DNA of 64,000 bases, from contig NC_087469.1 of assembly GCF_036321535.1 (NCBI RefSeq), positions 13,454,001-13,518,000 on the forward strand. Direction: 5' to 3'. Below the pieces are notes generated by a model. It saw only the letters and a program-made list of their open reading frames with translations. It was not told where the DNA came from and ran no database searches. Shown here one piece after another: positions 1,441 to 63,600 of this stretch (position 1 is the stretch's first letter; every line of letters starts with the position of its first letter). The translations under genes and the position numbers were made by a program. The DNA is from Camelus dromedarius. Lineage: Eukaryota.

Positions 1441-2063
1441 ACAGTACATGTATAATTTAAAGAGAAGTACAGTAATCTGAGATTTACCCTGTTTTGGGTA
1501 TCAAATGTCCTATCAATGACTTATAGGAAAAATGTTTCCTCTGAGATTTGCTAGTTCATAAATTGTCCACACCATCAATAGCATAGCTCTTGGTAAAGGA
1601 AAGAATTTGGGAACACTAGGTCTTGAGGGGAAAGTCTTACAATTTCAACTGTCCTAAAGTAAGGCTTTCTTCTGTATCAGAACTACAACAGTGTGTGAAA
1701 ACTGAACTGTGTTAATTCTCCCTATGAATTATGGGATGTGAATTAAGGGACAGTTATGTGGTCTAAAACAGTCCCTGTCAGTGAGGGGAATTATCCTTTT
1801 GGAACTTGTCTCAGCTATATTCTAAGTAAACAGCTCCCTCTGATGGGGACTTTTCTCTTAGACAATATTTGAATTAATTTAAAAGAAAAAAGAAATTGCT
1901 CTAAGAAATATCCCAAGAAGGCTTTAGTATATTTTTTAAAATCAAGTAAAGATCCTTGATATATAAGTATTGTTTTTAAAACTGCAAAAATATAATAAAT
2001 TTTAATATGGTGGAAGAAAAGCTAGGTAATTACTTTGCATTTTCCCTTCACTTGCCTTTATCT
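1441..2063 (+). repeat. Low-copy duplicated block, copy 1 (paralog at 44412-45030, about 93% identical)
   Basis: Direct alignment by eye: about 37 substitutions plus 3-nt and 7-nt indels over about 620 nt. Confidence 0.92.
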
Positions 2064-2084
2064 CAACATGAGAATTTGAATTCT

Positions 2085-6937: not shown

Positions 6938-7870
6938 TCAAAATTTTCTCCTCTCCAGGGTTTTTCTCAGAGCAATTTTAACATCTTTGTTCCGCAAACT
7001 GTAGATGAAGGGGTTAATCATGGGAACCACATTCGTGTAGAAGACAGAAGAGATTTTCCCCTCATCCACAGACCTAGCAGAAGATGGTTTAAGATACATA
7101 AATGCACCCGATCCAAAGAACAGAAAAACAGCAACTACGTGAGAGCTGCAGGTACTGAAGGCTTTGGACCTGCCCTCCCTGGAACTGATGCGGAGGATGC
7201 TGGACAGGATGAGACCATACGAGACAGAGATGGTGAGACTGGGAAAAATTATGTTGATGCCTCCCACAATGAAAACCACCAGCTCACTGACATAGGTGCC
7301 TGTGCAGGAGAGCTGGAGTAGAGGGAGGATGTCACAAAAATAATGGTTGATGGTATTTGCATCACAGAAGGTCAGTCTCAGCAGACATCCAGTGAGCGTC
7401 ATGGTATCAAAAAATGCCATCAAGTATGAACCAAGCACAAGCCTAGAACACACTGCAGGGGACATGGCAATGTTATACAACAGTGGGCGACAGATGGCCA
7501 CATAGCGATCGTAGGCCATTGATGTCAGGACATAGCATTCAGAAACGACAAAAAAACAGAAAAAGTAGAACTGAGTCATGCACCCCATGTAAGAGATAAC
7601 ATTCTTCTTTGATAAGAAATCCGTCAGCATTTTTGGAGTAAATACTGAAGAATAACAGAAGTCTACAAAGGACAAGTTGAAGAGGAAAAAGTACATGGGG
7701 GTGTGTAGGTGTGAACTAAGCCCAATGAGAGTCATTAAGCCCAAATTTCCCAACACGCTGACCATATACATTACTAGGAACAGGAAGAACAAGGGGAGCT
7801 GGAGATCTGGTTGGTCTGTTAAACCCAACAGAATGAATTCAGTCACAAAAGAACCATTTCCAGGAGCCAT
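6938..7870 (-). CDS. Olfactory receptor, family 8 subfamily B-like, intact 310 aa
   Basis: N-glycosylation site NGS; motifs [28 protein letters not shown] and [16 protein letters not shown]; pyrimidine-rich splice acceptor (ttttttctccatgtccacag) ending at 7887. Confidence 0.97.
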
Positions 7871-16366: not shown

Positions 16367-16819
16367 AAAAGCTGGAGAAAACTCTTCAGTCCTGGGAACC
16401 TGGTTTTTTAAAGTTGTGTATATTTATCTTTATTTTTCATTATTTCTCCAATGATTTCTTTTTGAAAATTCCAGGATGAAAAAACAGTAATAAAAGTAGG
16501 GTCCTAGACAAACAAAAAAAGTTAATTCTATATTCTGAATGGCCAGGTGTAATGGTTCAGATATAAAAATCAAAGGGAGGTAAATCCAAGGGAAATTTTA
16601 GAATGAAAGACCTATACAGATACTTAATCTTATTTAGATTATTTTTCTCTCCAAAATATTCTGTGTACTTTATTTACATAACTCTGCATAATCTTAAAAT
16701 AAATCTACCATGTATTTCATTAAAGGAAACAAGCAAAAACTCACAAAGCTATAATATATAACACCTCACTTTGTAACACTAAATATACCTGTTTATACAA
16801 ATATTTTCCAACAATGAAG

Positions 16820-17960
16820 ACATTCAGCAAAAGCTGAACTATGTACTGAATGCACACAGTCCACTTGCCCTAATTTGGCTAAATAAGCTATTTTAAAACT
16901 TACCTATTGCATATCATTGGGCTAGGTCTCTGAAGACTTAAATACCCACTTGGGGAAAAATATAGCTATAAATACTGAATGAACTGTTCTGGCAATATTT
17001 TATTATCCAAGTAGGGATTGCATTGATTTTGTTCATTATTTATTAAACTATAAATGAATGTTCTGTGAATATTTTAGTATATATGTAATGTTTGATGGTA
17101 AAATTTAAAAACAGTATTTTAATACATATCAAATTAATGTAAATTATTTGAAACTCAACATGCACTTATAATTAAAACAGAATTGTAGTTACTTTATATA
17201 TTAGATAATACTTCCAAATAAAGTATCTTTATAATCCTTACTGAAAATGTGTGCTTGCTTCTGGAACCTAATTTTTCCTATCATGTTTTAAGAAATAAAT
17301 AGCAATTACAGATAAAGTCTTAATAGTTATAACCATATTTTTATGATCACCACAGAAAGAAATATTGAATGTCAAATAACACACAGTGTTAAATCATTTT
17401 TAAAACCATCCAAAAATTTATCATTGAAATCGTTCAAATAATGTAAGAACTTTTCTCTTTGACAAACTTAATGTTAAACCAATCTAGAACAAATTTCATT
17501 TTTTCATTTCAAATTCTTCAAAATAACAAAGAAGCCCTAATCTGCTGAAGGCTTATGGATTCTTAGCGCAATCATACGGCTTTGATGGTACTAAGAGGAT
17601 ACATCAGCTCGGAATGGACCCGTATCTGACATGGGGAGACAGAGGCCGGGCATCTGCCTGGAGCTGTGAACATCAGGATTCCTTGCAGAGCCTCCCACCA
17701 CCACAGTCCTCAGTACCTACAGGTGATCACTGTACTCCTTGGGCACCTGAAACACAAACTCCTCCAGCAGCCCCACAGGTCTCTTGTCCACAAAGGGCGA
17801 CTCCCTCTGCATGTGGCTGCTAGAGCTGGCAACCAGAGGGTGAAGGGCCTCTTTGCCTGGGCTTTTAAAATGCAGCAGTGACTGCCATCTGTCTCACTGG
17901 GCTCGCTTCTTGCCAAAGCCATGGAAGTGCTCTCTTACCAAACCTCATTTATTCTTGCCC
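16820..17960 (+). repeat. Ancient low-copy paralogous block X (partner at about 51420-52510)
   Basis: About 75% collinear similarity, including an identical 31-mer (17743-17773 = 52321-52351). Confidence 0.85.
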
Positions 17961-19571
17961 TCCTAGAAGCCCCCTTCTAGGTTACAAAGGACAGTAGAGT
18001 CTATGTTCTGTGTGACACACACAAAAAAATTGTAGAGCCTTATTTTCTATTGTTTTCATTATAGAGAATCCTTTTTTCTTCTTTCCAAATGATACCATAA
18101 TATCTAATAGGCTTGTTAAAGTGTACATGCTACTATGAAAATTGTGACATGCCTACCAGAGGGGCATGTCCCCAAATTCTTCAGCCTCACCATCCCAGGA
18201 AATGATGACTATTATAAATAGATTGTGATAAATATTTCTCTGTAACTCACGCTGCTTACCCCACTTAATTAAACTTCTCCAGGAATAGGCACATTTTTCT
18301 AGTTGGGCACTGAAGCCTTGCAGAACATCTCTCTGCCATAGCCATCTTGGCTGAGGATATTATTCCCATGAAAACTCCCATTTTCAAGCTTATTCAGAAA
18401 CAACTCGCCAGAAGTTCTTTCTGTTCCCTCACAATTCTTTCTTTCCTTCCATTTCTTCATAATGAACAGTGGATTTAAAAACTGGGCTGTGCAATCTTGA
18501 GCAAGTCACATAACTGTTTCCTTATCTAAAAAATCAGGTAAGGAGACTTGTATTTTAATAGGATTTGTAAAATTGTGGTACACATTACGGACTGCAGACT
18601 TAATCCTTCTTCTGAGAGACAAAAGGGAGGTATCACATTTACATGTAGAAAGAATTAATCCCAACAGAACATGGTTTCCACCATATATTTTTGTTTGTTT
18701 TCTGAAAGCAGAAAACAGATCTTCCTTTGCAAAGGGGAAATCTCTGTCACACACTTAGACAAAGAATCTTGACATTACATGTGACAACCTATTCTGCAGG
18801 CAAGAATATCACTGTATAATTTTCAACCACAATGGCAAACCACAGATACATAGACAAGTTGGTGACAATCTCAATTCCACTGATGACGAAATATCAGCTG
18901 ACAAATACATTAAATAGAAGCATTTGTTACTGGTGAGGATTGAAAAAGGTAGGCGGAATAGTGTAGCTGATAAATTGTCAAGCATCCTCAAGAATAAAAG
19001 AAAGGACGTTGGTTCAACAAAGCATTCAATTCCTTTATACATGCATACTGAAAATCTAGAACAACAGCTAAGAGAGAACCCTAAAAGAGAGAATCCTAAG
19101 AGAATCCTGAAAAATTCTGGAAAATTTTCCAACTTTATCATGCCTACAATTTTTGTCATTCCTTCTCTGTTTTAAGCAGTTGTAGGTAATAAAACCCTTG
19201 TACCAGGAAAGGACTCAATGTAATAAAACCAAGTAAAGAACTTTTCAAATAGCATACCGTGCCATGGCTTACCTTGGATGGGAAAGACACACAAAAAAAT
19301 ATTAGGTAGTGTTATCCTTAGAAAGGTTATCATCCCATTGTCTCCCACTAGTGTGGGCTCACTTAGGGCTCAGGATGACCCTCAAGTCCAAGAATAAGCC
19401 CACAGAGTTACCTTATATGGCAAGAGAAGGAAAGACATTAGAGCAGAAATTCTGCCAAGAAGACTTTAGAAAGACAAATGAAGAGACTTAAGAAAAAAAA
19501 AATAGGAAGAAGAGGAAAAAGTGGACAGGAAGAGAAGAAAAAGCCGGAAAAGGAGGCATAAATGGTTCTGT

Positions 19572-20498
19572 TCAGTTTGTAATTCTCTTCAGGGTTTTCT
19601 TCACAGCAATCTTGACATCTTTGTTCCTGAGGCTATAAATGAGAGGGTTCAGCATGGGCACCACATTGGTGTAAAACACTGAGAAAAATTTCCCCTGCCC
19701 TACAGACCCAGCAGATGATGGCTTGATGTAAGTGAGCAGCCCAAAACCATAGAAGAGACCAACTGTTATTATGTGGGAGCCACAGGTGCTAAAGGCTTTG
19801 GACCAACCTTTAACTGATGGTATATGAAGGATACTGAAAAGAATCAAAGCATAAGAAATAAAGATAATGAGGCTAGATACTATAATAAGTGTGCCCACAA
19901 CAACAGAAACCACAAGCTCGTTGATATAGGTGCTGCTACAGGACAGCTGGAGGAGGGGGAAGATGTCACACATGTAATGGTTGATGATGTTGGAATCACA
20001 AAAGATCAACCTGATCATACACCCTGTGTGGACCACGGCACCAGCAAACCCCATCACATATGAACCAGACATCAGCAGAGAACAGACCTGAGGGGACATG
20101 GTAATTGTGTACATCAGGGGCTTACAGATGGCCACGTAACGATCATAGGCCATGGCTGTCAAGACATAGCACTCAGAGTTGACAAAAAAGCAGAAGAAAA
20201 AGAGCTGAGTCATGCATCCTCTAAAGGAGATAATATTCCTCTCTGAAGTAAAGCTCATTAGCATTTTGGGGGTAAACACAAATGAGTAACAGAGATCAAT
20301 AAAGGACAGGTTGAAGAGGAAGAAGTACATGGGGGTGTGAAGGTGCACGTTTAGACAAATTAGATTAATCAAGCTCAGATTGCCCAACACAGTGATCACG
20401 CAGTTCACCAAAAACAGGAAAAACAGGGGCAGTTGGAGTTCAGGTTGGTCTGTCAATCCCATAAGGATAAACTCGGTCACAGAGGAGTTATCTTCCAT
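19572..20498 (-). CDS. Olfactory receptor, family 8 subfamily C-like, intact 308 aa
   Basis: All OR motifs present. [17 protein letters not shown] and [11 protein letters not shown] recall OR8C-type receptors. Acceptor (tacccctgttcctgcag) ends at 20523. Confidence 0.96.
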
Positions 20499-22039: not shown

Positions 22040-22232
22040 AAGAAAGTGGGAGTGAGCTCCTCAAATCTGATTGAGTTTAAATCTGGTCATTAAACTTCTT
22101 AATTGTGAGACTGTAGATAATCAAATAACTTATCTGATCCTTGTATGTATATATATATATTTTTTTCTACTTATAAATCTATAAAATGAGGCTAGCAAAG
22201 GAGTTATCTCATAGGGTTGTTCTGAGGATTAC

Positions 22233-25316: not shown

Positions 25317-26050
25317 GGAGAGCAGAGTCTGGGCAATGAAACGAGGGAGGATAGTACAGCTGGTAAGGGAGTGCTGTCCAGCCGCTGACTATGTATCTAA
25401 GGGGGTGGAGCAAGACAGGCATATTTCCACGTGCCTGTCGGCCATTTACACATGTTCCTCTCGGATGTTCTTTTAAATCACTTGCCAATATATGAAATGG
25501 TCCTTTTATCACTGAGATACACTTTAATTATTAAGTTGTTATATATTTTGGGTACCTTTAAGATATATATATATTGCAAATATTCTTTCAGTCTGTGGCT
25601 TGTCTATGAATATTTTATGATAAACAGATGTTTTAATTTTAATAAAGTTTAATCTTCTTTTCCTATAGGGTTTAGTGCTTTCTAGAATATGCAAAAGATA
25701 TCTCTGCCTACACCAACATACTTTTCTATAGCTTTCTTTTGAAACATCTATGTTTAAGTTTTGTGTCTATTGTTTTGATACATTTTAAATTAATTTTTGT
25801 ATATGGCATTAGAGATCAAGTTTAATAGTTTTCTCAAGAACAGTTAGTATTTCCAGCATGAGTTTCTTAGATTTTTATTTCCCAATGGAGCTATTTATTA
25901 GTTGGGTAAAAAGCAATTAACTGTGTAAGTGAGGATCTTTTTCTGAATCTTCTCTTTTATCCATAATTTGTCTATTTTGTAGCAAAACCAATCGGTCTTG
26001 GTTATCTAAACAGTACAGTAAGCTTTAAAACCAGTAATGCAAGTCCTCTG

Positions 26051-26523
26051 TGTCATTTAAAGTTCTCCAGAAGCAGATGCCAAGAAATAATTAGACTTGT
26101 AAGACTTTTATTGTAGCAAACGTCTGTGAAGGATAAAATAGGAGGGAGTGGGGGTCAGTGATAAAGGCCGTCAGACATGGATGAAAGTCTAACATCTAAG
26201 ACAAGACAGAGAGAAGGAAGGATTGGGTAGAAAAATCTCAGACCACAGTGCAATTCTAAACAGTCTCAATAAGGATGATAGGAAGTCCCTAATGAAGACT
26301 GTCTGTTAGGAGACACCTGTGTTACCCAAGAATGGACCAGCTCCAATATGACCCACCGTGCTAAGCTACTGGTGGAGAACATCTCGGAGTAAGCATGACC
26401 TCTGCCTGAACACTGTGGTGTAGCCAAAGCTGAACTGGCTACATGCTTTCAGGGACTGATGCCCCCACAGCTGGTTATCTTGAAGGGGAGCTAAGCAGCA
26501 CATCAACAGCCTCCATAGTCCAC
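26051..26523 (-). mobile_element. LTR16-like (ERVL) solo LTR; paralogous copy at 54566-55026
   Basis: The minus-strand end …gcatctgcttctggagaact…gaca and the start in copy B (tgtagcagccatag) resemble LTR16 consensus as recalled. Confidence 0.55.
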
Positions 26524-26754
26524 CCCCCAAAAATAAATGATACTCTAAAGTTCTTTTGATTTACTTGTTTACTATTGTGATTGGCTATTATATTTCATTA
26601 TTATTTATAAATGATGAAGCTTATTATTTATTATTATTGTTATTATTGTTGTTACTCAATAAGTTTTTCTTATCCTCTAAATACATCTGGCATTTTATAT
26701 ATACAAATGGGACAAGTACCGGAGACACAGGGAAATTAAAGAAAGCTGCATTAC

Positions 26755-27155: not shown

Positions 27156-27208
27156 AAAGAAAGCTGCATTACTTTAAATCTGTTTATTATCTTTGTGGTG
27201 AGGCAAGG

Positions 27209-44411: not shown

Positions 44412-45030
44412 ACAGTATGTGTGTAATATAAAGAGAAGTGCAGTAATCTGAGATTTACCCTGTTTGGAGTATCAAATGTCCTATCAGTGACTTACAGGAA
44501 AAACGTTCACTCTGAGATTTGCGAGTTCATAAATTGTCTACACCGTCAATAGCATAGCTCTCGGTAAAGAAAAGAATTTGGGAACACTAGGTCTTGAGGG
44601 GAAAGTCTTCTTACAATGTCAACTGTCCTAAAGTAAGGCTTTCTTCTGTATGAGAACTACAACAGTGTGTGAAAACTGAACTGTGTTAATTCTCCCTATG
44701 AATTATGGGATGTGAATTAAGGGACAGTTATGTGGTCTAAAAGAGTCCCTGTCAGTGAAGGGAATTATCCTCTTGGAACTTGTTTCAGCTATATTCTAAG
44801 TAAATAGCTCCCTCTGATGGGGACTTTTGTCTTAGACAATATTTGAATTAATTTAAAAGAAAAAAGAAATTGCTCTAAGAAATATTCCAAGAAGTATATT
44901 TTTTAAAATCAAGTAAAGATTCTTGATATATAACTCTTGTTGTTAAAACTGCAAAAATATAATAAGTTTTAATAAGGTGGAAGAAAAGCTGGGTAATTAC
45001 TTTGCACTTTTCTTTCATTTGCCTTTATCT
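44412..45030 (+). repeat. Low-copy duplicated block, copy 2 (paralog of 1441-2063)
   Basis: See 1441-2063. It abuts an L1 ORF1 fragment at 45031. Confidence 0.92.
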
Positions 45031-48111: not shown

Positions 48112-49044
48112 TTAGCAGAACAACTTTTTCCTCAAAGTCTTACTCAGGGCAACTTGGACATCTTTGTTTCTCAAACTGTAGATGAAAGGATTCATCATTG
48201 GCCCCACAATGGTGTAAAACACTGTGGTCACTTTATCTTGATCCAGAGACCCGGCAGGAAAAGGCTTAAGATACATGAATGCTGATGATCCAAAGAAAAG
48301 AGAAACCACAATGATGTGGGAGCTGCAGGTACTGAAGGCTTTGGACCTGCCCTCTGTAGAACGGATGCGGAGGATGCTGGAGAGGATCAAGGTGTAAGAA
48401 ATGGAGATGGTGAGACTGGGCACTATGACATTAATGCCCACCACGATGAACACCACCAGCTCATTGATGTAGGTGCTGGTGCAGGAGAGCCGAAGGAGAG
48501 GAGGTATGTCACACATGTAATGATTGATGACGTTGCCATCACAGAAGGACAGTCTCAGCATGCATCCAGTGTGGGCCATGGCGCCCACAAGCCCCATCGC
48601 ATATGAACCCACAGTCAGCAGGAGGCAGACCTGATGGGACATGGTGACCTTGTAAAGCAGGGGCTTACAGATGGCCACATATCGGTCATAAGCCATTGAT
48701 GTCAAAATGCAGCACTCATCAATAACAAAGAAGGAGAAGAAATAGAGCTGAGCCATGCACCCTGCATAAGAGATTACGTGCTGGTTTGCAAAACTCATCA
48801 GCATTTTGGGAGTTATGACAGAAGAGTAGCAGAGGTCAATGGAGGAAAGATTGAAAAGAAAGTAATACATGGGAGTGTGCAGGTGAGGATTCAGACCGAT
48901 CAGAATAATCAAGCCAATGTTTCCCACCACAGTGACCATATATATTCCCAAGAAAATGAAAAAGAGGGGCAGCTGGAGTTCTGGCTCTTGTGTTAAACCC
49001 AGCAGGATAAACTCAGTCAGTGAAGAGTCATTCCCTAAGGCCAT
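48112..49044 (-). CDS. Olfactory receptor, family 8 subfamily B-like, intact 310 aa
   Basis: All canonical OR motifs; NDS glycosylation site; acceptor (ctttgtcctgttcccacag) ends at 49062. Confidence 0.97.
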
Positions 49045-51270: not shown

Positions 51271-54200
51271 TACGGGTTTTACACACAGGATAGTTGAAAA
51301 TCCAATCGTTACTAAAATGAGTCCCAATTACTATTCTCAGACCCCTCAAAATTAAAAATTACAAGGAAGGGGAGTGGTAGAAAAATACTTGAAGATACAA
51401 CAGCTGAAGACATTCACCTAAAATAAAACTGTACAGTAAATGCCCCCTGACCATGTAATCTAATTTGAGAAGAAAGTTGACTGAATAAGCCATTTAACAA
51501 CCTTCACATCTGGTATTGTTGGGCTAGGCTGCTGGATCTAACTACCCACTCAAAACAGCTAAAAATACCGCATAAAATATTCTACCATATTCTATTTTAT
51601 GAACTGGCTTGTGATTACATAAATTTTGCATTTATTAAACTGCAAATGTATGTTTTATGAACTTTTCAGGGTTATGTTACATTTGCTGGTAGAATCAGAA
51701 AAGTTGGTATATTCATTATATACCATTATAATGTAAATTATTTAAACATCAACAATATGTCTTAAATGAGATTTATGATTTTTTATTAAATAATAATCTG
51801 AAATAAAATATATTTGTAATTCTCAATGAAAATTTGTACTTGCTTCTGGAATATAATTTCTTTGTAACAGGCTTTGTGCTTGAAATAACTGTTTGCAATT
51901 CCTGATCAAGAATTTTTAATGACTATATCTCCAATAGCTGTTGTAATCATCATTAGTGAGAAATTTTGTATGTGTAAGTGATAAGAGTTTAAGTCATTTT
52001 TACCACCATTTAAAACTTTACAATTGAAATCATATGTAAGTAATGAGTTTTCTTTTATTTAAAAATTTAATGTTCAATCAATTTAGCACCAGCCTCACTT
52101 TTTCATTTCAATTATTTCAAATTAACAAAGAAGCTCTTATTTGCAGAAGGCTTGTGTATTCTTAGAGCAATCACACTGCAACTAGTTTAGATGTCACTAA
52201 AAGGATAAATTAGCTGGAGATGAACAGAAGTATCTGAAATGGGGAGACAGAGACTGAGACATCTGCTGGGAGCTATGAACATCAGAATTCCCTGCCTAGC
52301 CTGCCAGCACCACAGGTTGAGCACCTGAAACACAAACTCCTCCAGCAGCCCTATGGGACTCCTGTCCACAGTGGGCACTGCACATGGCTGCGGTAGCTGG
52401 TGTCCAGGTGGTGGAGGACGTCTTTGGTTGGGCTTCTGAAATAGAGCAGTGGATGCCTCACTTGGGTGACCATTCTTGCCTCTGGCCAAAGCATGGTACG
52501 TGCCGCCACACTGGACACATCTGCCTCTTGCCCTCCCAAGAACACCTATCTAGGACATGATCTAGGCTCTGTGCCTTTAACATGTGTTCATATGGGAATT
52601 TCACATGGATAAAACAAACTTTTTTCCCAGTTAAAATAGTATTTATGAAGTACATACAGAAGGATAATAAAGTCATATATGACACTACCCATATCTTAAA
52701 GAAATTCTCCATTTACGAGCATAATATTTCCAAGTACCCTAAAGTTGACTTGAAAATGCTTATTATATTGAAGTAATTTTTACTTCAAATTCCATAATTA
52801 TAGTAATTTTTTAAAAAACTACATTTAAGTGTTTAATCATTTCAGTTTTATGGGAATTGTGATTTTTAATTTCTTATAATGATCACTTTTGCCAGGTTGA
52901 TCAAAAGAATTTAAAGTCAATTTGTAAAATAAGCCTGTTGATTCACAGACCACTCCAGGCACTATGCTGACTCATACTGCCGCCAGGGTGTGCTGGGGAT
53001 TTGGATATCACATTGCAGGCACGTGTCATGACTGCAACTATATTTTGCAGAGACAGCATACTCCCAAAAAGTGTGTGAAACTGGTAAGTCAAGAATATAC
53101 ATGGCTTTTTATTTGCTTGGATGGGACCAACCATTCACGGAGGTGTGTCTCTCTTCCCACATTTTGTTTGCTTGGTTCTTCTACATTTTAACCTCAGATG
53201 AGCTCTCCTCATGTAGTGAAGATAGGACTTCTAGAATCTCTAGATTTAATCTTACCAATTCAGTAACTTCAATGAGAAGAGAAAAGTTTGTTAAAATAAT
53301 TTTGGCAGAAAAGACTATAGCAAAATGACTATTTCTGACTAAATCACTGTCATCAGGGTTTGGCATGTGCTGATTAGATGGGATATGCCTTGTGAGATGG
53401 GCAAGTCAGCCCAACAATATCACATAAAATGTGTTTCCTGTTTCAAATTCTAGTCAAAAAATAGCTTATTTTGAACTTCCTATAAAGGATATTTAAAAAA
53501 GAGAATTGGAGATATATACATAGAAAGGAAAAAAGAGCAAAAGATGAACCAGAGAAAAATATAAAGACAAATGAACTATATAAAATAGCTACCACTCCCA
53601 GGACTGATGGAACAGAAAGAAAGAGGAAGAAGCATAACCAGATTCTAGAATCTTGGAGGAGAAACTCTACAGAATTGGTGTTTGGGTTGGTGGAGGGCTT
53701 GGAGATGCCCCACAGCTGGTGCTTGGATGCCTGAAATCCACCAAGAGGGTGCAGCGTCCAACATGGAGAGAGACCAAGAGGAAAGCCTGACAAGTGCTTG
53801 AGCTACTCAAGGGGCAGAGTCCGGGCAATGCAGTGAGGGAGGATGGTATAGCTGGTATGGGAGTGCTGTCCAGCTACTGACTATACAACTAAGGGGGTGC
53901 AGTAAGTTAGGCACATTTCCATGTGCTTGTTGGCCATTTGCACATGTTCCTTTGGGATATGTCTTTCAAATGACATGCCAGTACAAGAAATGGTCTTTTT
54001 ATCAGAGATACATTTTAACTAAGAATATAGTGTTATATATATATTCTGGAAACTGTATCTTTATCAAATCTATGTATTGCAAATATTCTTCTAGTCTGTG
54101 GCTTGCCTATAAATATTTTTTGATAACTAGATGTTCTAATTCAAATGTTCATTTTATTTTTTTCCTTCTTTTAGTGCTTTCTAGAATATGTCTAAGAAAT

Positions 54201-55857
54201 CTGTGCCTATACCAATATACGTTTCTGTTTTCTTCTAGAAGATTTATACTTAAGCATTAAGTGTATGGTTTTGATCTCCATTTAAAATTAATTTTTGTGT
54301 ATGATGTGAAGTAGAAATCAAAGTTCACTGTTTCCCTCATGAACACATAGTACTTCCAGCATCAATTGCTTAGAAGATTTTTCTTTACCTATAGATTTAC
54401 TTAGTTGTTCAGTCAAAAATCAATTAACTGTAAAAGTGAGGATCTGTTTCTGAATATTCTGTCGTGCCCCATGGATTTATCTGTCTGTATTTATAACAAA
54501 ACTAACCAGTCTTGATTACCATATCCTGCAACTAAGTTATAAAATCAGTTAGTGTAAATCCTCTGCATCATTTAGAGTTCCCCAAGAAACAAATGCTAAG
54601 AAATGCTTAGATTTCCAAGACATTTATTGCGGTAAGTGTCTGTAAAGGATAAAATGGGAGGAAGTGGAGGTCAGTGGAAAACGCTTCAGACCAGGATGAA
54701 TGTGTGATACCTACAAAAGGAAAGCGAGAAGGAAGGATTGGGTAAGAAAATCTTAAGACCACAGTGCAGTTCAAAAAGTCTATTAGGATGACAGGAAGTC
54801 CCCAGGCAAAGATCACCTATCAGAAGACTCATGTTACACAGAAACTGATGAGTTCCGGTATGACCCACTGTGCTAAGCCACTGGCTGAGGACATCTCAGA
54901 GTAAGCATGGGCTCTGCCTGAACACCATGGTGGATCCAAAGGAGTATCAGCTAGAGACAGTCAGTGATGCTCCCACAGCTGGTTCTACTGAAGGGGAGTT
55001 AACAGCACCTCTCTATGGCTGCTACATGCCACTCCCCAAAAGAAATTATACCCCAAAGTTCTTTCGGATTATTTGTTATTGCTATTTATTATTATATTTT
55101 ATTAATCATCCCTTATAACATTAAATGTATTACTACTTTTCAAACAAGGGGATCCAATACGAGAAGTTTTTGACCTAACGCTATATTTGATACTCCAAAT
55201 ATATGAATGGGAAATGCACTGGAGAAATGGGGAAATTATAGGGAAGAGCATCTAGGTAAATATATTTATTATCTTATTGGTGAGGCAACTTTTAAGTAAT
55301 TTCACAAAATGCTGTTGATAGGAATATGGTTTATTGTCTTAACATGCACCTGTTTTTCATGATACATCACTGGAGAAGTAAAACATGGCTAAGATGTTTC
55401 TCCTAACCAAATGTGTAGTATTTTCCTTAAGCAATAAAAAACAAAATTTACAATAAGAATTATATGCTTCTTTCAAAACATTTGGTGTCATTTTAGATAG
55501 TAATGGATGCAGTTGTATAATAAACCACCCATCATGCTTATTGAGTCCTGAGATATGTATGTATTATTCCTCTAACCACCCTCTCTTAATGCTGTGTTGG
55601 CAATAAATGGTGGGCTTTTATGTGTTCTCTTGAATATTAAATGCATTTGGCTGAAAGAGGCTCTCAGAAGCAGGTGTCATGTAAAACAGATTTTGCCATT
55701 TTCAAAGGGAGTAAGAAAAGTAAGAATAATAAAAAGTAGTATGAAAAACAGAAAAGACAACATTAGGAGGATCTGAGCCTACTGCAAGCTGTCTACGCAA
55801 TTTGCAATGAAGACATTTCTTTGAATCCTCCTTGTGTATACCAGTAACAATATTGTT

Positions 55858-57112
55858 TAAAGACATTATAAACCTCTTAGAAGAAAACAGGCAAAACATC
55901 ATCTGATATAAATCTCAGCAATGTTCTCCTAGGGAAGTCTNNNNNNNNNNNNNNNNNNNNNNNNNNNNNNNNNNNNNNNNNNNNNNNNNNNNNNNNNNNN
56001 NNNNNNNNNNNNNNNNNNNNNNNNNNNNNNNNNNNNNNNNNNNNNNNNNNNNNNNNNNNNNNNNNNNNNNNNNNNNNNNNNNNNNGGGCTTAATTTCCAG
56101 AATATATAAACAACTCATACAACTATAAAGGAAAAAACAAACACCCCAATCCAAAAATAGGCGGAAGACCTAAACAAGAAATTTTCCAGTGAAGACATAC
56201 AAATGCCCAATAGGCACATAAAAAAATGCTCAATATTGCTAGTTATCAGAGAAATACAAATCAAAACTACAATGGGGTATCACCTCACACCAGTCAGAAT
56301 GGCCATCATTCAAAAGTCCACAAAGGATAAATGCTGGAGAGGGTGTGGATAAAAGGGAATCCTCCTACACTGTTTGTGGAAATGTAGTTTGGCAGAGCTG
56401 TTATGGAAAACAGTATGGAGATTCCTCAAAAGACTAAAAACAGACTTACCAGATGATCCAGCAATCCCACTCCTGGGCATATATCCAGAGGGAACTTTAA
56501 TTTGAAAAAATGCATGCACCCCAGTGTTCATAGCAGCATTATTTACAATAGCCAAGACATGGAAACAACCTAAATGTCCATCAACAGATAGCTGGATAAA
56601 GAAGTGGTGGTACATTTATACAATGGAATATTACTCAGCCATAAAATATAATAAAGCAATGACATTTGCAGCAACATGGATGGACCTGGAGATTGTCATT
56701 CTAAGTGAAGTAGGCCAGAAAAAGAAAGAAAAATACCATATAATACCACTTATATGAGGAATCTTAAAAAAAAAAAACAGGCAAACGAACTTATCTGCAA
56801 AACAGAAACTGACTCACAGACATAGAGAACAAACTTGTGGTTACCAGGGGAGGAGGGGGGTGGGAGGTGATAAATTAGAGTTTCATATTTCTAGATATTA
56901 ACTGATAAATACAGAGTAAACGAGTTTCTACTTACTGTATAGTGCAGGGAACTATATTTGATATCTTGTAGTAGCTTACAGTGAAAAAGAATATGAAAAT
57001 TAATATATGTATATTCATGTATGACTGAAGCACTGTGCTGTACACCAGAAATTGACACCACATTGTAAACTGACTATACTTAAATAAAAATACATTTATA
57101 CCAAAAAAAAAA
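55858..57112 (+). mobile_element. 5'-truncated L1 (ORF2 C-terminus, 3'UTR, A-tail), in block Y copy B only
   Basis: ORF2 C-terminal motifs ([19 protein letters not shown]) and an A-tail at about 57103-57114. Masked N run at 55941-56085. No TSD seen. Confidence 0.9.
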
Positions 57113-57499
57113 AACCACAGAGAGAATTCTTTTCCAGTATTTGGCACTTTTGTATCTAGATCAGCAAGTTCTAATTTTAACTTCATGTACTTACAAAATT
57201 CAACATATTTGTCCTGATTAGGAATAGCCCAGGAGACAAAAAAGGAGTATGAAAAAAATCAGTTCATATTTCCTTTTATAAAAATGCTATTAGTATTTAG
57301 TAAACTGTTACAAGGTGCAAGAGATAGAGGAAAAAAATGAGACAAGATTGGCTATAAGGGAAATGATGACACAAATCCATTATACCACACATAATACAAT
57401 CTGTAGAAGCAACATGGTTATGAATGAATTCTCACCTTGAAAATCATTAATAAAAATTAAGTACAAAATTGAATGTCTTTACATTATTGCTGTTTCTAA

Positions 57500-58444
57500 T
57501 TAGAACATGTTTCTCCTCTGGATTTTAAACAGGGATTTCTTCAGTGCAACTTTGACATCCCTGTTCCTCAAACTGTAGATCAGGGGATTGAGCATGGGTC
57601 CCACATTAGTATAGAAAACAGAAGAAACTTTTCCCTGCTCCATAGATCCAGGAGAAGAATATTTAAGATACATAAATGCTGCTGAACCAAAAAAAAGGGA
57701 AAGAGCAATGACGTGGGAGCTACAGGTACTGAAAGCTTTTGATCTTCCTTGAGCAGATCTGATGTGAAGAATGCTAGTGAGGATGAAGATGTAAGAAACC
57801 AGGATGGTGACACTGGGTACCGCAATATTAATACTTACCACAATAAGAACTACTAACTCGTTGACATAAGTGCTGGTGCAAGAGAGTTGGAGGAGTGGGA
57901 GGATGTCACACAAGTAATGGTTGATGATATTAACATTGCAGAAGGTTAGTCTGAGCATGCACCCGGTGTGGGCAGAGGCTCCGGCAAATCCCATCACATA
58001 TGCAGCCAGAGACAGCACCACACAGACCCGACGGGACATGGTGACCTTATACAGCAACGGATTACAGATGGCCACATAGCGATCATAGGCCATTGAGGTC
58101 AACATATAACATTCAGAGATGACAAAAAAGAGAAAGAACAACAGCTGAGTCATGCACCCAACATAGGAGATGATATTCTTCATGGACACAAAGTTCATCA
58201 GCATCTTGGGGGTGAAAACAGATGAGTAACAGAGATCAACGAAGGACAAGTTGAAGAGGAAATAGTACATGGGGGTGTGGAGGTGAGAATTTAGACCAAT
58301 AAGAATGATCAAGCCAAGATTGCCCACCAAGGTGACAATGTAGATCATCAGAAACAAGCAAAAGAGGGGTTGCTGGAGCTCTGGACGGTCTGTTAACCCG
58401 GCAAGAATAAATTCAGTCACTAAGGAGTCATTTCTAGCCAGCAT
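57500..58444 (-). CDS. OR8B3: Olfactory receptor OR8B2/OR8B3-like, copy B, 314 aa (likely start at 58444)
   Basis: Same as copy A. The C-terminal [11 protein letters not shown]…KIQRRNMF is closer to the human OR8B3 sequence as recalled. Confidence 0.93.
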
Positions 58445-60699
58445 TCTCAACTTCGGAAATCTGTGAGAACAGAAGACAACTCCATTAATAGGAACACAGC
58501 TCTGTCCTGACAAACTGTCTTTTATATGAGCGTTATGAGAAACAGACTCAGACTGGCAGAAATCACAGAAGTCCTCCTTTGCTTCATAGGGTCTGAAGGT
58601 ACTGCCACACACACCCCTCAGCACTGAAATCACTGCCTTTGGTTGCGTGAGCTGCGTGTTACAAAGAACTGCTCTATCTTTACCAGAAGACAGAGGGGCG
58701 GAGCCGACGAGGAACGAGCCTACCTAATGGTGAGCTTCAGGAGTGGGGATGCATCCCTGTCTCTCCCTCCTGTTCATCTGATCCCTCACTTCCTAGTTCC
58801 TGGTCATGTTTCCATTACCCTACGAGATAAACCTAAACCTATCCTGAAAGAAATACTGAAAGGTCTTCTCTAAATAAAAAGCAGGAATCTACAGAGCAGA
58901 GAAAACCACAATTGGAAATGCAGTAACTACAATAAACAGCAAGAGAATAAACATGAAGATGCAAAAGGGGACATCAGAATCAAAATGTGGGAGAGGGGAA
59001 GCAAGAAAATGGAGATTTTTAAAATTCTTTTTAGCATTTTGAGTCTATATCCTTACCAGCCTAAAGCAAATAAATACAGTAATGGGTTAACATACTTGAA
59101 AAACAGGGTATCCATCACCCTACTAGATACCTCAGTTCCCCTGTGATGACCTACAACAAAAGAGAGGATTTCTATGAGGCAGAGACCCATATACATATTT
59201 GCTGCCAGGAAGTCTCTCACAGTCTATAAGGTTTTCAGATGCTTAACTACAAGAATCCAGGAAGTCAATGATCAGTAACAGGTACTGAGGTGAACCCTTG
59301 GACCCTAAGCTTTGTACTTAATCGTACATTCCAGTGTTTCCACACATTCTCCTCCTCCCTTCCATCCTAGCTGGACAGAGAATGAATAAAGGAAGGTGGG
59401 TGTGCTTTCCTTGGTTTTGTAGGACAGCATGGAAGAGAAACGTAATTAATTTAACTGCTGATTTAGTTAGTTGTTATGTTTGTGGAAATATGCCAAGCTG
59501 TACACTTATTACGTATGTCAAGTTTTCTATATGTATATTTCAACTAAGAAATTCTTAGAAACTGATTTCTTCTTCTTCTGACGTTGCTATGTTCTGGGTT
59601 TGTCACTTGGAACTGCTACCGTTCTCCTGCTACCAGAATGAGGATGCAGCCAACACAGAGGGTGTGCTGAGAACAATGCAGGCAGTCGCGTCAGAGCTCC
59701 AGACTTCGGAGTTTCTTGTTTTTCAGTATCAATCCTTTCCCTCATTTTTCAGCAACAGAGAGACAAAAACAGACACTTGGCTAACTCACTCTGTTTCCAC
59801 TGAGGAGACTCAGTCCTGGCCCTGTAGGCGTGTTTCACCTCCACTGTCCTGGAATAAGAACGGACTTTGCAGATATCAAAGCTGAGCAGATGTAGTCACA
59901 GAGTCTTCTCCCTTTATTGGTAAAAGAATCATAGCCCAGATACCACAGTCTGAATCATAGCAGTCAGTCTATGGTTCAGAGTAATCTTGTGGTTATAAAT
60001 TTATTAAGAGACTGTGAAGGGAAACCACAGACTTGGTATCTGAGCCACCGTGTCACACAGCACATGGCATCTGCTAAAGGCTTATAATTCTTCTGGACCT
60101 GATTAGAAATCCAGGTGTAGCTGTCCCCCTAGGATCTTCCCCTCATGGTAAGCTTTTCAGGGAAGAGCAGAGGGTGCGCATTTACACTATAATTGTGACA
60201 GTAAATGTTAATTTTCCATCAGAGATTATATATCCCCCAGAGCATAGAAGAAAGGATTCTCTCCTGTCCCTCATAAAGATGCAAATAATTAATGTCATTG
60301 AAAATTCACTAATTATAAATCTAGGTTAACATTATTTTTAAGAATTTAAGTTCATAAATATATATGAACATTTCAGAAAAGTTTACTTACTATGGCCCTT
60401 TAAAATATTTGAGTCCCTTTAATCAGTTTTTATACAAATTTTACAGACAAAAATCAAAGGATCTTTTTATTTGATTTCAGAGATGATTGCCTAATAAAAC
60501 ATCTACTGGTAGAATAATTCCATGGAAATGGAATTACCTTAGGCCGTTCTGATGCTGTATGTATTTGCTTTTTATAGATTAAAATCAAATCTATAAGAAA
60601 AATCACTGTTAATCAGCTTCCATTACAAAGAAACATGACTTTATAATTTCCATGTATGTGTTAACTTATAATCACGCTTGTGAGAAGTCGAATTTTTAA

Positions 60700-63600
60700 A
60701 ATTTTCAAATTATTATAGATTCACAGGAAATTTCAAAACTTAGGGATAGAGTCCCTTGAAATCCACCCAGCCTCTTACCACGGTGACATGTTCTACAACC
60801 GCAGAACAGCAGCAACACCAGGAATTTGACGTTGGTATAAGGTTAACAGGGTATGGGACTACAGATGTTATTCAGCATTAGGTAATTCTGCACGCAGCAT
60901 GTGTTTGTGTTGTGTGTATGATCCTTTTAATGTGCTGTTGGATTGGTTTGTGAGATTTCCGTTGAGAATTTTTGCATCTATGTTTATCAGAGATACTGGC
61001 CTGTAGTTTTCAGTTCTCACCGTCTTTACCTGACATTGTTGTGAAGGCAATTCTGGTTGTAACTGAGTTTGATGGTGTTCCCTTTCTTCAATTGTTGGAA
61101 GCATTTTAGAAGTTTTGGTCTTACTCTTGCTTAAATGTTTGGTACAATTCACAAGTNNNNNNNNNNNNNNNNNNNNNNNNNNNNNNNNNNNNNNNNNNNN
61201 NNNNNNNNNNNNNNNNNNNNNNNNNNNNNNNNNNNNNNNNNNNNNNNNNNNNNNNNNNNNNNNNNNNNNNNNNNNNNNNNNNNNNNNNNNNNNNNNNNNN
61301 NNNNNNNNNNNNNNNNNNNNNNNNNNNNNNNNNNNNNNNNNTCATAGTAGTCTTACGATCTTTGGTACTACTGTGGTATCAGCTGTAATGTTTCCTCTTC
61401 GTCATATCATTACCGTCTTTGTTTCATGCTATAGCTGTCGAGTTAAAGTTAATTTTGTCTGATATAAGTATAGTTACTGTTACTGTTTTTTGGTTTCCAC
61501 TTGTATAGAATATCTTTTTCACATCCCCACTTTCAGTCTATGTGCTAAAGCTAAAGTAAGTCTCTTGCGTGCAGCAGGCAACTAGGTCTCTTTTTCGTTC
61601 TGTTTTAATCCATTCAGCCACTCTATGCCTTTTGACTGAAGAATTTAAACCAATTACGTTTACAGTGATGATTGATAGGTAACGACTTACTAATGCCATC
61701 TTAATTGCTCTCTGGCTGTTTTATAATTCCCTTGTTCTTTTTTTCCTCTCTTGGTGTCTTCTTTTGTGACTTGATGAATTTCTCTAATGTTATGTTCCTA
61801 TTCTCTTCTCTTTATCTTTTTGTATCTAATGTAGGCTTTTGCTTTGTGATTACCATGAGACTTACATAAAGTATTTCGCAGGTATAACACTATCTTAAGG
61901 TGATAACAGCTTAACTGTGATCACATACAAAAATATTACCCTTTTCCTCCCTCATTCTGATGTCACAATTTACCTCATTGCATGTTATGTATCCATTAGC
62001 AAATTATTGTAGCTATAGTTATTTTTAATAGTTTTGTCCTTTAACTTTTTCTTGAGTTGAGTGGTTAACACACCACCATCTTACATAGTATTGTATTCTG
62101 AAATTGACTAGATTTTTTTACTTACCAGTGTATTGTATATTTTATGTTCCATGTTACTAATTAGTATTCTTTTGTTTCAGCTTGAAGAGCTGCTTTCAGC
62201 ATCTCTTTTACAGCAGGTCTAGTGCTGATTAATTCCCTCAACTTGTGTTTGTTTGGTAAAGTTTTATCTCACCTTCATTTTTTTTAACACTTTTTATTGA
62301 GTTATAATCATTTATTGAGTATATAATCATATAATAATTTTATTGAGTTATCATATAATCATTGTCAAATTCCAGTGAAGAGCACAATTTTTCAGTTATA
62401 CATGAACACATATATATTCGCTGTCACATTTTTTTCTCTGTGAGCTACCATAAGATCTTGTATACATTTCCCTGTGCTATACAGTATAATCTTGTTTATC
62501 TATTCCACATTTTGAAATCCCAGTTGTGTCCCTTCCCACCCCCCGCCCCCTTGGCAACCACAAGTTTGTATTCTATGTCTATGAGTGTGTTTCTGATTTG
62601 TATTTATGTTCATCACCTTCATTTCTGAAAGACAACTCTGCTGGTAAAAGTATTTTTGGTTAGCAGGGCAGTTTTTCCCTTCAGCACTTGGAGTATATTA
62701 TTTCACTCCCTTCCTGGGCTACAAGGTTTCTCCTGAGAAATCTGCTGATAGTCTAGTGGGGGGTTCCCTTGCAACTGAAGATTATTTTTCCTTTGGCTGC
62801 TCTTAAATTCTTTGATTTTAGACAGCTTAATTACAGTGTGTCTTGGAGAAGATTGTTTTGAGTTGTGATACTGGGTAACCTTTTAACTTCATGAAGCTGG
62901 ATTCCAAAAATCTCCCCAGATTTGGGATGTTCTTAGCCATTACTCTTCTAAATAAGCTTTCTGCCCCTTTCTCCATCTTTCTCCTGCTGGGAAATAATGC
63001 CTACAATGTTTCTCTTAATGATATCCCATAGTAGGCTTATTCATGCTTTTTAAAAAATTTTTTTTCTGGTTCTCTTCTAACTGAATAATTTCAAATGTCC
63101 AGTCTTCTACTTCACAGACTCATCCTTCTGCTTGATCTAACCTGATGCCAATGGTCTCTATCACATTTTTTTTTCATTTCATTCATTGTATTCTTTAGCT
63201 CCAAATTTCTATTTGGTTCTTTTTTATTTCTCTCTATTAAGCATCTCATTTTGTTTCTGTTTTGTTTTCATGATTTCTTTGAACCATCTTTCTGTGTTTT
63301 CTTGTAGCTTGCTGAGCTCCCATAAAATAGCTATTTTAAATTCTTATCAGGCAAATCACAGACCTCCATTTCTTTGGGGTCAGTTTCTGGAAAATTATTG
63401 TGTTCCTTTGGTGGTGTCACATTACACTGATTTTTCAAATTCCTTGAAGACTCTGTTGTTGTCTTCGTATCTGAAGAAGTAGTCATTGCCTCTAGTCTTT
63501 CTGACTGGCTTCAGGAGAGAATTACCTTCTGTCAGTCCTGCTAGTAATTCTGGCACTTTCTGATCTTCTCTAGGTGACATCTGCTCTACATTTCTTGTTC
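60700..63600 (-). mobile_element. Old L1M (ORF2 5' part to ORF1), interrupted by a young L1 tail
   Basis: Continuous degenerate antisense L1. Masked N run at 61157-61341. Confidence 0.8.
62281..62612 (-). mobile_element. Young L1 3' end with 12-bp TSD
   Basis: TSD tcaccttcattt at 62269-62280 and 62613-62624; same family as 26755-27155. Confidence 0.88.

What the first reader, a model, noticed from the sequence alone, without database searches (positions are those of the whole stretch)
1441..61538. A whole multi-gene cassette is present twice, with a patchwork of identities
The same order occurs twice. Unit 1: 620-bp block (1441), OR8B (6938), block X (16820), block Y (25320), OR8B3-like (28538), flank to 33440. 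Unit 2: 620-bp block (44412), OR8B (48112), X' (51420), Y' (53810), OR8B3-like (57500), flank to 61538. Collinear parts differ greatly in divergence: about 7%, clearly divergent ORs, about 25%, 20-25%, then 7%, 0.5%, 3% and 4%. One duplication event would give roughly one divergence level. The simplest reading is an ancient tandem duplication followed by several localized gene-conversion or unequal-crossover events of different ages.
Basis: partly seen in the sequence, partly recalled or inferred. Interest (0 to 1): 0.7.

Follow-up and report, generated by a model that had tools for sequence, protein, structure and literature searches.

The report
Old OR8B3 duplicate, patched by gene conversion
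In a camel smell-receptor cluster, two copies of the OR8B3 gene come from a duplication older than the camel-deer split. Repeated copy-and-paste repair (gene conversion) has since made a 4.6-kb stretch of them nearly identical; this is a clean, cross-species-checked case of a well-known process, not a new kind of thing.

Summary
The collinear blocks are real, two-copy in the window and far from uniform in divergence (25%, 19%, 0.7%, 3-4%; chi-square p about 1e-144).

The window is a camel OR8B array with six intact OR genes on the minus strand and one partial OR on the plus strand. Orthologous loci from alpaca, fallow deer and donkey settle the right-hand half:
- Block Y and the gene's 3' end group by orthology (387 sites against 3; trees 100/100). 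The duplication therefore predates the camelid-ruminant split.
- From codon about 230 of OR8B3 to about 4 kb upstream, the two copies within one species are more alike than orthologs between species. There are 33 species-grouping sites against 0 in the core.
- Derived states shared by both copies occur in camel (9) and in alpaca (17).
- Tracts run in both directions and differ in age. Deer has its own tract, limited to the coding sequence.

So an ancient duplication plus several gene conversions is confirmed.

The "whole cassette" is not. OR1 (6938) and OR5 (48112) belong to different ancient clades (dS 1.29, as for any other pair), and the ORs at 19572 and 37338 have no partner. X probably belongs to the old OR8B3 unit. 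The 620-bp block stays unresolved.

Known process, new instance. This scan had noted the coding-sequence boundary before (s1-200372).

The parts
28538..29482 (-). OR3: OR8B3 copy of unit 1, intact 314-aa coding sequence
   Evidence: ORF and translation. 88% amino-acid identity to Bos and Dama OR8B3. The alpaca ortholog is in L001.
57500..58444 (-). OR6: OR8B3 copy of unit 2, intact 314-aa coding sequence
   Evidence: 21 nucleotide and 13 amino-acid differences from OR3; 12 of the 13 amino-acid differences lie after codon 249. dS is 0.019 for codons 1-228 and 0.135 for codons 229-314. The alpaca ortholog is in L002.
25322..28141 (.). Block Y: old, unconverted homology downstream of OR3. Partner is 53814-55855. 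Interrupted by a camel-only LINE-1 piece at 26754-27156.
   Evidence: 70-75% identity. 292 orthology sites against 1 species-grouping site. Tree ((deerU1,(camelU1,alpacaU1)),(deerU2,(camelU2,alpacaU2))) with 100/100 support.
53814..55855 (.). Block Y': partner of Y, downstream of OR6
   Evidence: Orthologous to deer L003 13125-15100.
28150..28736 (.). 3' flank plus last ~66 codons of OR3. Paralog divergence 19%; orthology retained. Partner is 57122-57698.
   Evidence: 95 orthology sites against 1 species-grouping site. Tree has the orthology topology, 100/99.
28797..30345 (.). Core conversion tract: codons 1 to about 228 of OR8B3 plus about 860 bp upstream. 99.3% alike between the camel copies. 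Partner is about 57759-59308.
   Evidence: 33 species-grouping sites, 0 orthology sites. Camel copies are sisters, 100/100. 11 mismatches in 1609 bp over 28737-30345. Alignment is gap-free.
30346..31093 (.). Upstream tract S4: both camelid copies carry unit-1-type sequence, so unit 1 was donor and unit 2 acceptor. Partner is about 59309-60055.
   Evidence: Identity to deer unit 1 is 0.78 against 0.67 to deer unit 2. Tree groups camelids with deer unit 1, 81/84. Mostly species-grouping sites.
31149..32476 (.). Upstream tract S5: both camelid copies carry unit-2-type sequence, so unit 2 was donor. Converted before the camel-alpaca split. Contains the camel-only LINE-1 insertion at 31463-32310. 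Partner is about 60111-60569.
   Evidence: Identity to deer unit 2 is 0.82 against 0.69-0.70 to deer unit 1. Sister to deer unit 2, 93/96. 9 orthology sites, 0 species-grouping sites.
32561..33440 (.). Upstream tract S6: unit-2-type in both copies, with exchange after the split. Homology ends at 33451 / 61549. Partner is about 60654-61538.
   Evidence: Identity 0.75-0.76 against 0.63-0.66. Tree support 83/87. 10 species-grouping sites.
31463..32310 (-). LINE-1 3' fragment inserted in unit 1 only, with a 12-bp target-site duplication (TTGAGTCCCTTT). Absent from alpaca and from unit 2. Holds the N run 31887-32075.
55856..57121 (+). LINE-1 3' fragment with A-tail inserted in unit 2 between Y' and the gene block, shared with alpaca. 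Holds the N run 55941-56085.
   Evidence: ORF2 residues 1073-1135, E 9e-24. A-tail seen. Present in L002.
16809..17981 (.). Block X, downstream of OR2. Partner X' is 51398-52554, at 67% identity.
   Evidence: Two-copy. Only syntenic orthologs in about 170 kb of related loci. The ratio of paralog to camel-deer ortholog divergence is about 1.3, as for Y at about 1.2.
51398..52554 (.). Block X', 1.26 kb from Y' and upstream of OR5
   Evidence: Contiguous with Y' in deer L003 13125-17608.
1441..2063 (.). 620-bp block, directly after the 3' flank of the partial plus-strand OR0. Partner is 44412-45030, 92.5% alike (centre about 95-98% by hand count, edges about 88-89%).
   Evidence: A deer OR0/OR1-type locus, L009, carries a 65-69% homolog together with each camel copy's own left flank.
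44412..45030 (.). 620-bp block, second copy. It lies in a 14.6-kb segment (33451-48112) that is absent at the syntenic place in deer.
6938..7870 (-). OR1: OR8B8-like / Olfr145-like clade. Not a partner of OR5.
48112..49044 (-). OR5: its own ancient clade. The deer ortholog is 90% alike (L005 5098-6075).
19572..20498 (-). OR2: intact OR between X and Y in unit 1, with no partner in unit 2
   Evidence: In donkey both OR8B3 units are followed by an OR2-type gene.
37338..38273 (-). OR4: outlier OR (57-61% amino-acid identity to the others) inside 34324-39655, which is absent from alpaca

Best explanation
Origin (shown). A unit of about 7-10 kb was duplicated before camelids and ruminants separated. 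It held block Y, the OR8B3 gene and about 3 kb of upstream flank, and probably also block X with an OR2-type gene whose partner has since been lost from unit 2. In fallow deer the two units are still 65-78% alike everywhere outside the coding sequence.

Homogenisation (shown). In the camelid line, non-allelic (interlocus) gene conversion between the two direct copies, 29 kb apart, repeatedly overwrote one copy with the other. The affected stretch runs from about codon 230-249 of OR8B3 to the upstream end of the homology.

Direction and order of events (inferred from the tract pattern):
- Unit 2 gave its distal upstream part (31149-33440) to unit 1 before the camel-alpaca split.
- Unit 1 gave 30346-31093 to unit 2.
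- The core (28797-30345: the first two thirds of the coding sequence plus about 860 bp upstream) went on being exchanged after the split, in camel and in alpaca separately. That leaves the camel copies 99.3% alike.

What was spared. The 3' end of the gene and block Y were never touched, so the two receptors differ almost only from TM6 onward. Gene order and copy number are the same in camel, alpaca and deer, so these were non-crossover patches, not unequal crossovers.
For: (1) Four-taxon sites. In 25322-28736 there are 387 orthology sites against 3 species-grouping sites. In 28797-30345 there are 0 against 33. Further upstream, runs of each kind alternate.
(2) Sliding identity. In the core the paralogs are 0.99-1.00 alike in camel and 0.95-1.00 in alpaca, while orthologs are 0.93-0.98.
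(3) Segment trees. Y and the 3' end give the orthology topology at 100/100. In the core the camel copies are sisters at 100/100.
(4) Polarised species-grouping sites: 9 derived in both camel copies and 17 derived in both alpaca copies.
(5) Donor polarity from deer: 0.78 against 0.67 in S4; 0.82 against 0.69 in S5; 0.75 against 0.64 in S6.
(6) The deer pair is 65-78% alike in the flanks but 98-99% alike across the coding sequence. This shows an old, uniform duplication plus an independent conversion.
(7) Run-length permutation test p <= 2e-4 for the camel, alpaca and deer pairs; heterogeneity p 1e-144.
(8) Both copies occur in the same samples of several studies.
(9) A LINE-1 with a target-site duplication sits in only one copy, so the two copies are separate loci.
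Against: - Donor direction rests on one ruminant plus a donkey pair whose own history is unclear. Tree support there is only 81-93%.
- The whole-coding-sequence tree inside camelids is a mixture.
- Absolute ages depend on dates and rates taken from general knowledge.
- Whether X belongs to the same event is inferred from collinearity and divergence ratios only.
- No population data were examined, so ongoing conversion is inferred and not seen.
Confidence: 0.9

Rival explanations
1. One ancient tandem duplication copied the whole cassette 620 block - OR8B - X - Y - OR8B3, so that OR1/OR5 and OR3/OR6 are two partner pairs of the same age.
For: The three independent block pairs (620, X, Y-to-flank) lie in the same order and orientation. 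Given that the pairs exist, chance would give that order and orientation about 1 time in 24.
Against: - OR1-OR5 dS is 1.29 (pS 0.62, saturated). That equals OR1-OR3 (1.22) and OR3-OR5 (1.23), and is 3-4 times the corrected divergence of X (0.43) or Y (0.30).
- In the coding-sequence tree OR1 and OR5 sit in separate, fully supported clades, each with deer relatives, and no fork joins them.
- OR2 and OR4 have no partners.
- There is no old homology around OR1/OR5 other than X and the 620 block.
Confidence: 0.08
2. For X and the 620-bp block only: they are relics of interspersed repeats that happen to be collinear, not parts of any duplication unit.
For:
- The 620 pair is an isolated patch; its two copies have no homologous flanks.
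- Deer L009 holds a second, inverted 200-bp piece of the 620 sequence, which looks like a repeat.
Against: - Both are two-copy in the window, with no transposon protein domain found.
- In about 170 kb of alpaca, deer and donkey OR-cluster DNA, X occurs only at syntenic places.
- X's divergence ratio matches Y's.
- The 620 block has no terminal inverted repeats, LTR ends, A-tail or target-site duplication.
- The 620 block's identity is graded (centre about 95-98%, edges about 88-89%), unlike independent insertions.
Confidence: 0.3
3. A recent segmental duplication of about 5 kb placed a second OR8B3 copy in the array. The graded identity reflects uneven mutation or selection, not gene conversion.
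For: The block is 95% alike overall and has sharp ends.
Against: - Deer and alpaca have both copies at the same places.
- Old 65-78% homology covers the whole unit in deer.
- Old homology (Y) abuts the block in camel.
- Species-grouping sites in non-coding DNA, derived in both lineages, cannot arise without exchange after speciation.
Confidence: 0.02
4. Assembly artefact: one locus assembled twice, or two loci partly collapsed onto each other.
For: N runs lie at the same homologous position in both copies (33058-33201 and 61157-61341).
Against: - Copy-specific words of both copies are held at 0.85-0.97 by the same samples (S1, S10, S16) in several studies, and by a second Camelus species.
- The gapless alpaca assembly shows the same two loci.
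- The N runs have exactly the alpaca interval lengths.
- A LINE-1 with a target-site duplication is present in one copy only.
Confidence: 0.02

Closest known systems
Interlocus gene conversion among olfactory-receptor paralogs in tandem clusters (human chromosome 17 OR cluster; mouse MOR28 cluster). Recalled from general knowledge; no paper was read here.
   Same: Tandem OR paralogs whose coding regions are homogenised in patches while the flanks stay diverged. Paralogs group by species.
   Different: Here the tracts reach about 4 kb into the upstream non-coding DNA, run in both directions, and are dated on both sides of a speciation event. An independent tract restricted to the coding sequence is seen in deer.
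Human fetal globin genes HBG1/HBG2: a 5-kb tandem duplicate with a sharply bounded conversion tract. General knowledge.
   Same: An old tandem duplication of a few kb, with a near-identical 5' part, a sharp boundary inside the gene and a diverged 3' part.
   Different: The camel copies are 29 kb apart with one or two other OR genes between them. No boundary element (such as a simple repeat) was looked for or found.
TAAR8/TAAR7 palindrome in the same camel genome (scan note s1-193369)
   Same: Same genome. A chemosensory receptor duplicate that is old in its flanks and kept near-identical in the genes by conversion.
   Different: That one is an inverted (palindromic) pair. This one is a direct pair, and here only two thirds of the gene is homogenised.

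Membership tests
Interlocus (non-allelic) gene conversion / concerted evolution | Over a bounded tract, paralogs within a species are more alike than orthologs between species | tested here: met
   Core 28797-30345: camel pair 0.995, alpaca pair 0.986, orthologs 0.971-0.973. 33 species-grouping sites against 0 orthology sites. Camel copies are sisters, 100/100.
Interlocus (non-allelic) gene conversion / concerted evolution | Flanking homologous DNA keeps the orthology topology, so the duplication is older than the speciation | tested here: met
   Y and 28150-28736: 387 sites against 3. Trees 100/100 and 100/99, including deer.
Interlocus (non-allelic) gene conversion / concerted evolution | Runs of identity significantly longer than chance among variable sites (Sawyer-type test) | tested here: met
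   Longest concordant runs are 197 (camel), 166 (alpaca) and 21 (deer) variable sites. Permutation p <= 2e-4 for each.
Interlocus (non-allelic) gene conversion / concerted evolution | Copy number and gene order are unchanged (non-crossover), as opposed to unequal crossing-over | tested here: met
   Two OR8B3 copies with an OR5 ortholog between them in camel, alpaca and deer.
Interlocus (non-allelic) gene conversion / concerted evolution | Direct observation of transfer (conversion tracts segregating in a population or pedigree) | not testable with these tools
   OR1-OR5 dS is 1.29 against 0.30-0.43 for Y and X. They fall in separate clades. OR2 and OR4 are unpaired.
Interspersed repeats as the source of X, Y and the 620 block | Many dispersed copies, or transposon-encoded protein remnants | tested here: inconclusive
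   Two copies each in the window. No Pfam or LINE-1 ORF2 match. Elsewhere only syntenic copies were seen, except a deer 620 homolog in an OR0-type unit. Genome-wide copy number was not obtainable. Y is ruled out as independent insertions by its continuity with the gene block and by the trees.
OR8B3 orthology of the duplicated gene | Best named relatives across mammals are OR8B3, with a 7tm_4 domain | tested here: met
   85-88% amino-acid identity to OR8B3 of Bos, Dama, Vulpes, Equus and Elephas. Pfam PF13853.

The most novel reading that the evidence does not exclude
The homogenisation may not be a passive by-product. OR8B3 duplicates have been converted independently in camels, alpaca and deer, and the donkey pair also shows elevated coding-sequence identity. 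In camelids the tract takes in the whole upstream (promoter-side) region but always stops before TM6-TM7 and the tail. Selection might therefore favour a modular pair: two receptors with one shared odorant-facing front, one shared regulatory region, and two alternative back ends. A first-reader note (s1-193421) describes a similar-looking pair 10 kb outside this window.
Probability: 0.12. Interest if true: 0.55.

Novelty: new member of a known kind. Interest (0 to 1): 0.33.

Why it matters
This is a compact, well-dated example of how smell-receptor arrays evolve. In one 8-kb unit it shows a duplication older than the camelid-ruminant split, conversion tracts in both directions, exchange both before and after the camel-alpaca split, and an independent event in deer.

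The practical lesson is for OR phylogenies and copy-age estimates. Identity between the two OR8B3 copies (97.8% in the coding sequence) would date the duplication about two orders of magnitude too young, and gene trees would wrongly show lineage-specific duplications. It also shows that collinear blocks in an OR array need not mean a single cassette duplication.

Tried and rejected
- Read depth on the 620-bp block (read laying on window 700-3700). No query holding those 50 letters was sent to any search tool afterwards. Local scripts compared fetched loci with the whole window file. From then on those places were masked.\n- Pfam scan of the open frames in X, Y and the 620 block: nothing.\n- My hunch that Y' carries a LINE-1 ORF2 motif: not supported (E > 1 against solved ORF2 structures).\n- tRNA-derived SINE check: no tRNA-like genes.\n- The alpaca ortholog of OR1, wanted for a four-taxon test of the 620 block, is not on record.\n- Deer proteins P0133 and P0158 turned out not to be syntenic (270 kb and 1.2 Mb away). 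They still gave the deer 620 homolog and showed an OR5-type gene next to an OR1-type gene. That deer OR5-type copy is a recent or converted copy of the deer OR5 ortholog, so it does not support an ancient OR5-OR1 cassette.\n- The Bactrian-camel protein XP_010960001.1 (P0114) is an exact OR8B3/OR5 chimera. Later versions of the record are plain OR5, so I treat it as an old assembly or annotation artefact, not a real hybrid gene.\n- Literature searches found no paper on OR8B2/OR8B3 conversion or on camel OR conversion.\n- The donkey loci could not be assigned to unit 1 or unit 2.

Full report
**What the window is.** The 64-kb window is part of a mammalian olfactory-receptor array.
- Six intact OR genes lie on the minus strand: OR1 6938-7870, OR2 19572-20498, OR3 28538-29482, OR4 37338-38273, OR5 48112-49044 and OR6 57500-58444.
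- A partial OR0 lies on the plus strand at the left edge.
- OR3 and OR6 are OR8B3 orthologs, 85-88% amino-acid identical to OR8B3 of cattle, deer, fox, horse and elephant.
- Their 90% cluster holds Camelus dromedarius, C. bactrianus, C. ferus and two alpaca proteins. An earlier scan note also calls this genome camel.
- OR1 belongs to the OR8B8-like / Olfr145-like group.

| Block pair | Identity |
|---|---|
| 1441-2063 ~ 44412-45030 | 92.5% |
| X 16809-17981 ~ 51398-52554 | 67% |
| Y 25322-26741 ~ 53814-55241 | 73-75% |
| 27541-28141 ~ 55291-55855 | 70-71% |
| 28150-31462 ~ 57122-60420 | 94.8% |
| 32311-33057 ~ 60409-61156 | 95% |
| 33243-33451 ~ 61342-61549 | 94-96% |

- From Y to the right end the homology is one continuous stretch. 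It is broken only by retrotransposon insertions present in one unit: 26754-27156 and 31463-32310 in unit 1, and 55856-57121 in unit 2.
- Those insertions are LINE-1 3' ends with A-tails. Two have clear target-site duplications. ORF2 residues are confirmed against solved LINE-1 structures.
- X, Y and the 620 block are two-copy in the window.
- Divergence between the camel copies is 25.3% (Y), 19.2% (28150-28736), 0.7% (28737-30345), 3.3% (30346-31462), 4.2% (32311-33057) and 3.0% (33243-33440). Heterogeneity is overwhelming (p 1e-144; p 1e-7 within the high-identity part alone).

**Gaps and artefacts.**
- Three N runs (33058-33201, 61157-61341, 55941-56085) span exactly as many bases as the alpaca orthologous intervals (146, 185, 145). 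I compared coordinates only and read no letters. The flanks are therefore continuous, and these runs look like exact-length masks.
- The run 31887-32075 sits inside the camel-only LINE-1, and its length matches the paralogous LINE-1 copy.
- The run 22408-22555 sits in another camel-only insertion. The run 4396-4538 could not be tested.
- None touches a coding sequence.
- Copy-specific words of both OR8B3 blocks are held at 0.85-0.97 by the same samples in several independent studies, and copy 2 also by a second species. The duplicate is therefore not an assembly artefact.

**The decisive test.** I fetched the two alpaca OR8B3 loci.
- L001 is the ortholog of unit 1 and L002 of unit 2, at 96-97% flank identity.
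- In a four-sequence alignment, every parsimony-informative site was classed in one of two ways:
  - "orthology" sites, where camel U1 = alpaca U1 and differs from camel U2 = alpaca U2;
  - "species-grouping" sites, where camel U1 = camel U2 and differs from alpaca U1 = alpaca U2.

| Stretch (unit 1 coordinates) | Orthology sites | Species-grouping sites |
|---|---|---|
| 25322-28736 | 387 | 3 |
| 28797-30345 | 0 | 33 |
| 30383-30495 | 2 | 0 |
| 30556-31093 | 0 | 10 |
| 31149-32476 | 9 | 0 |
| 32561-33333 | 0 | 10 |

- The alignment in the densest cluster of species-grouping sites is gap-free.
- With deer and donkey as outgroups, 9 of these sites are derived in both camel copies and 17 in both alpaca copies. 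Exchange therefore happened after the split in both lineages.
- A Sawyer-type run test gives p <= 2e-4 for the camel, alpaca and deer pairs.

**Age and extent of the duplication.** Fallow deer has the same two loci 21 kb apart.
- L003 is the ortholog of unit 2 (with Y' and X' contiguous). L005 is the ortholog of unit 1 (with the OR2 ortholog downstream and the OR5 ortholog 3.9 kb upstream).
- Segment trees for Y and for 28150-28736 give ((deerU1,(camelU1,alpacaU1)),(deerU2,(camelU2,alpacaU2))) at 100/100 and 100/99. The duplication therefore predates the camelid-ruminant split.
- In deer the two units are 65-78% alike over the whole unit outside the coding sequence. This is the roughly uniform level that one old duplication should give.
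- The deer coding sequence itself is 98-99% alike from about codon 1 to 295. That is an independent conversion limited to the gene.
- In the gene tree, OR8B3 paralogs group by lineage. The deer pair and the four camelid genes are each 100/100.

**Direction of transfer.** I used deer as the yardstick.
- Both camelid copies are unit-1-like in 30346-31093 (0.78 against 0.67).
- Both are unit-2-like in 31149-32476 (0.82 against 0.69) and in 32561-33440 (0.75 against 0.64). Trees agree at 81-93% support.
- Conversion therefore went both ways.
- The unit-2-type segment 31149-32476 shows only orthology sites, so it was transferred before the camel-alpaca split. The other tracts were exchanged again afterwards.
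- The 3' boundary of the youngest tract lies between 28736 and 28797, that is, codons 229-249, just after the KAFSTC motif. This agrees with scan note s1-200372.
- The two receptors differ at 13 residues, 12 of them after codon 249. dS is 0.019 before the boundary and 0.135 after it.

**The left half of the proposed cassette.**
- OR1 and OR5 are not a duplicated pair. Their dS is 1.29 (saturated), the same as for all other pairs, and 3-4 times the corrected divergence of X or Y. They fall in different, fully supported clades, each with deer relatives.
- X is probably part of the old OR8B3 unit:
  - It is two-copy.
  - It is present only at syntenic places in the other loci.
  - Its ratio of paralog to camel-deer ortholog divergence (about 1.3) matches that of Y (about 1.2).
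  - In donkey both OR8B3 units carry an OR2-type gene downstream. This suggests an original unit OR8B3 - Y - OR2 - X, with the OR2 partner later lost from unit 2. This step is inference.
- The 620-bp pair is an isolated patch (92.5% alike; centre about 95-98% by hand count, edges about 88-89%).
  - It has no transposon hallmarks.
  - A deer OR0/OR1-type locus holds a 65-69% homolog that also matches each camel copy's own left flank.
  - This fits two old low-copy sequences later patched by conversion.

**Comparison with what is known.** Patchy gene conversion between tandem OR paralogs, and between duplicated genes generally (fetal globins, opsins), is textbook. I state this from general knowledge.
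- Searches of the held library found nothing specific to OR8B2/OR8B3 or to camel ORs.
- The same scan already described conversion in this genome's TAAR cluster.
- This is therefore a new, unusually well-resolved instance of a known process. It has bidirectional tracts of different ages and parallel events in separate lineages.

**Scores.** Confidence in the main explanation is 0.9. Interest is 0.33.

Noticed in passing
window 34324-39655 (OR4 at 37338-38273): A 5.3-kb segment with an intact, outlier OR (57-61% amino-acid identity to its neighbours) is present in camel but absent from the alpaca ortholog (junction at L001 about 6015-6020). The whole stretch 33451-48112 is missing at the syntenic place in deer. 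No flanking direct repeats were found, so insertion in camel and loss in alpaca cannot be told apart.
   Followed up: partly
P0114 (XP_010960001.1, Camelus bactrianus) against window OR3/OR6 and OR5: This older RefSeq protein is an exact chimera: residues 1-141 are OR8B3 and residues 142-311 are OR5. Later versions of the same accession are plain OR5. It is probably an artefact of an older short-read assembly.
   Followed up: yes
window 22632-23423 (+): The 260-aa open frame listed by the ORF scan is a LINE-1 ORF2 fragment (residues 662-836, E 2e-58). It partly lies in a camel-only insertion (22121-23290) that also holds the N run 22408-22555.
   Followed up: yes
L005 5148-6074 and L010 5448-6374 (fallow deer): Deer has a second OR5-type gene 1.2 Mb away, in reversed orientation, directly upstream of an OR1-type gene. 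Its coding sequence is about 97.5% like the syntenic OR5 ortholog, while its flanks are much more diverged. This may be another conversion or a recent duplication.
   Followed up: partly
L007 and L008 (donkey): Two units of flank - OR8B3 - Y - OR2-type, about 14 kb long and 77-84% alike, lie 160 kb apart. Their coding sequences are more alike (89-97%) than their flanks.
   Followed up: partly
window 33058-33201, 55941-56085, 61157-61341: These N runs have exactly the length of the alpaca orthologous intervals, and two of them sit at homologous positions of the two OR8B3 units. They behave like deliberate masks of a particular sequence, not like assembly gaps. No letters were read or filled.
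   Followed up: partly
window 7-590 (+) and 610-1439: The partial OR0 on the plus strand converges on OR1. It is 77% alike to OR1 in inverted orientation, and its 3' flank is homologous to the 3' flanks of deer OR1-type genes in L009.
   Followed up: no
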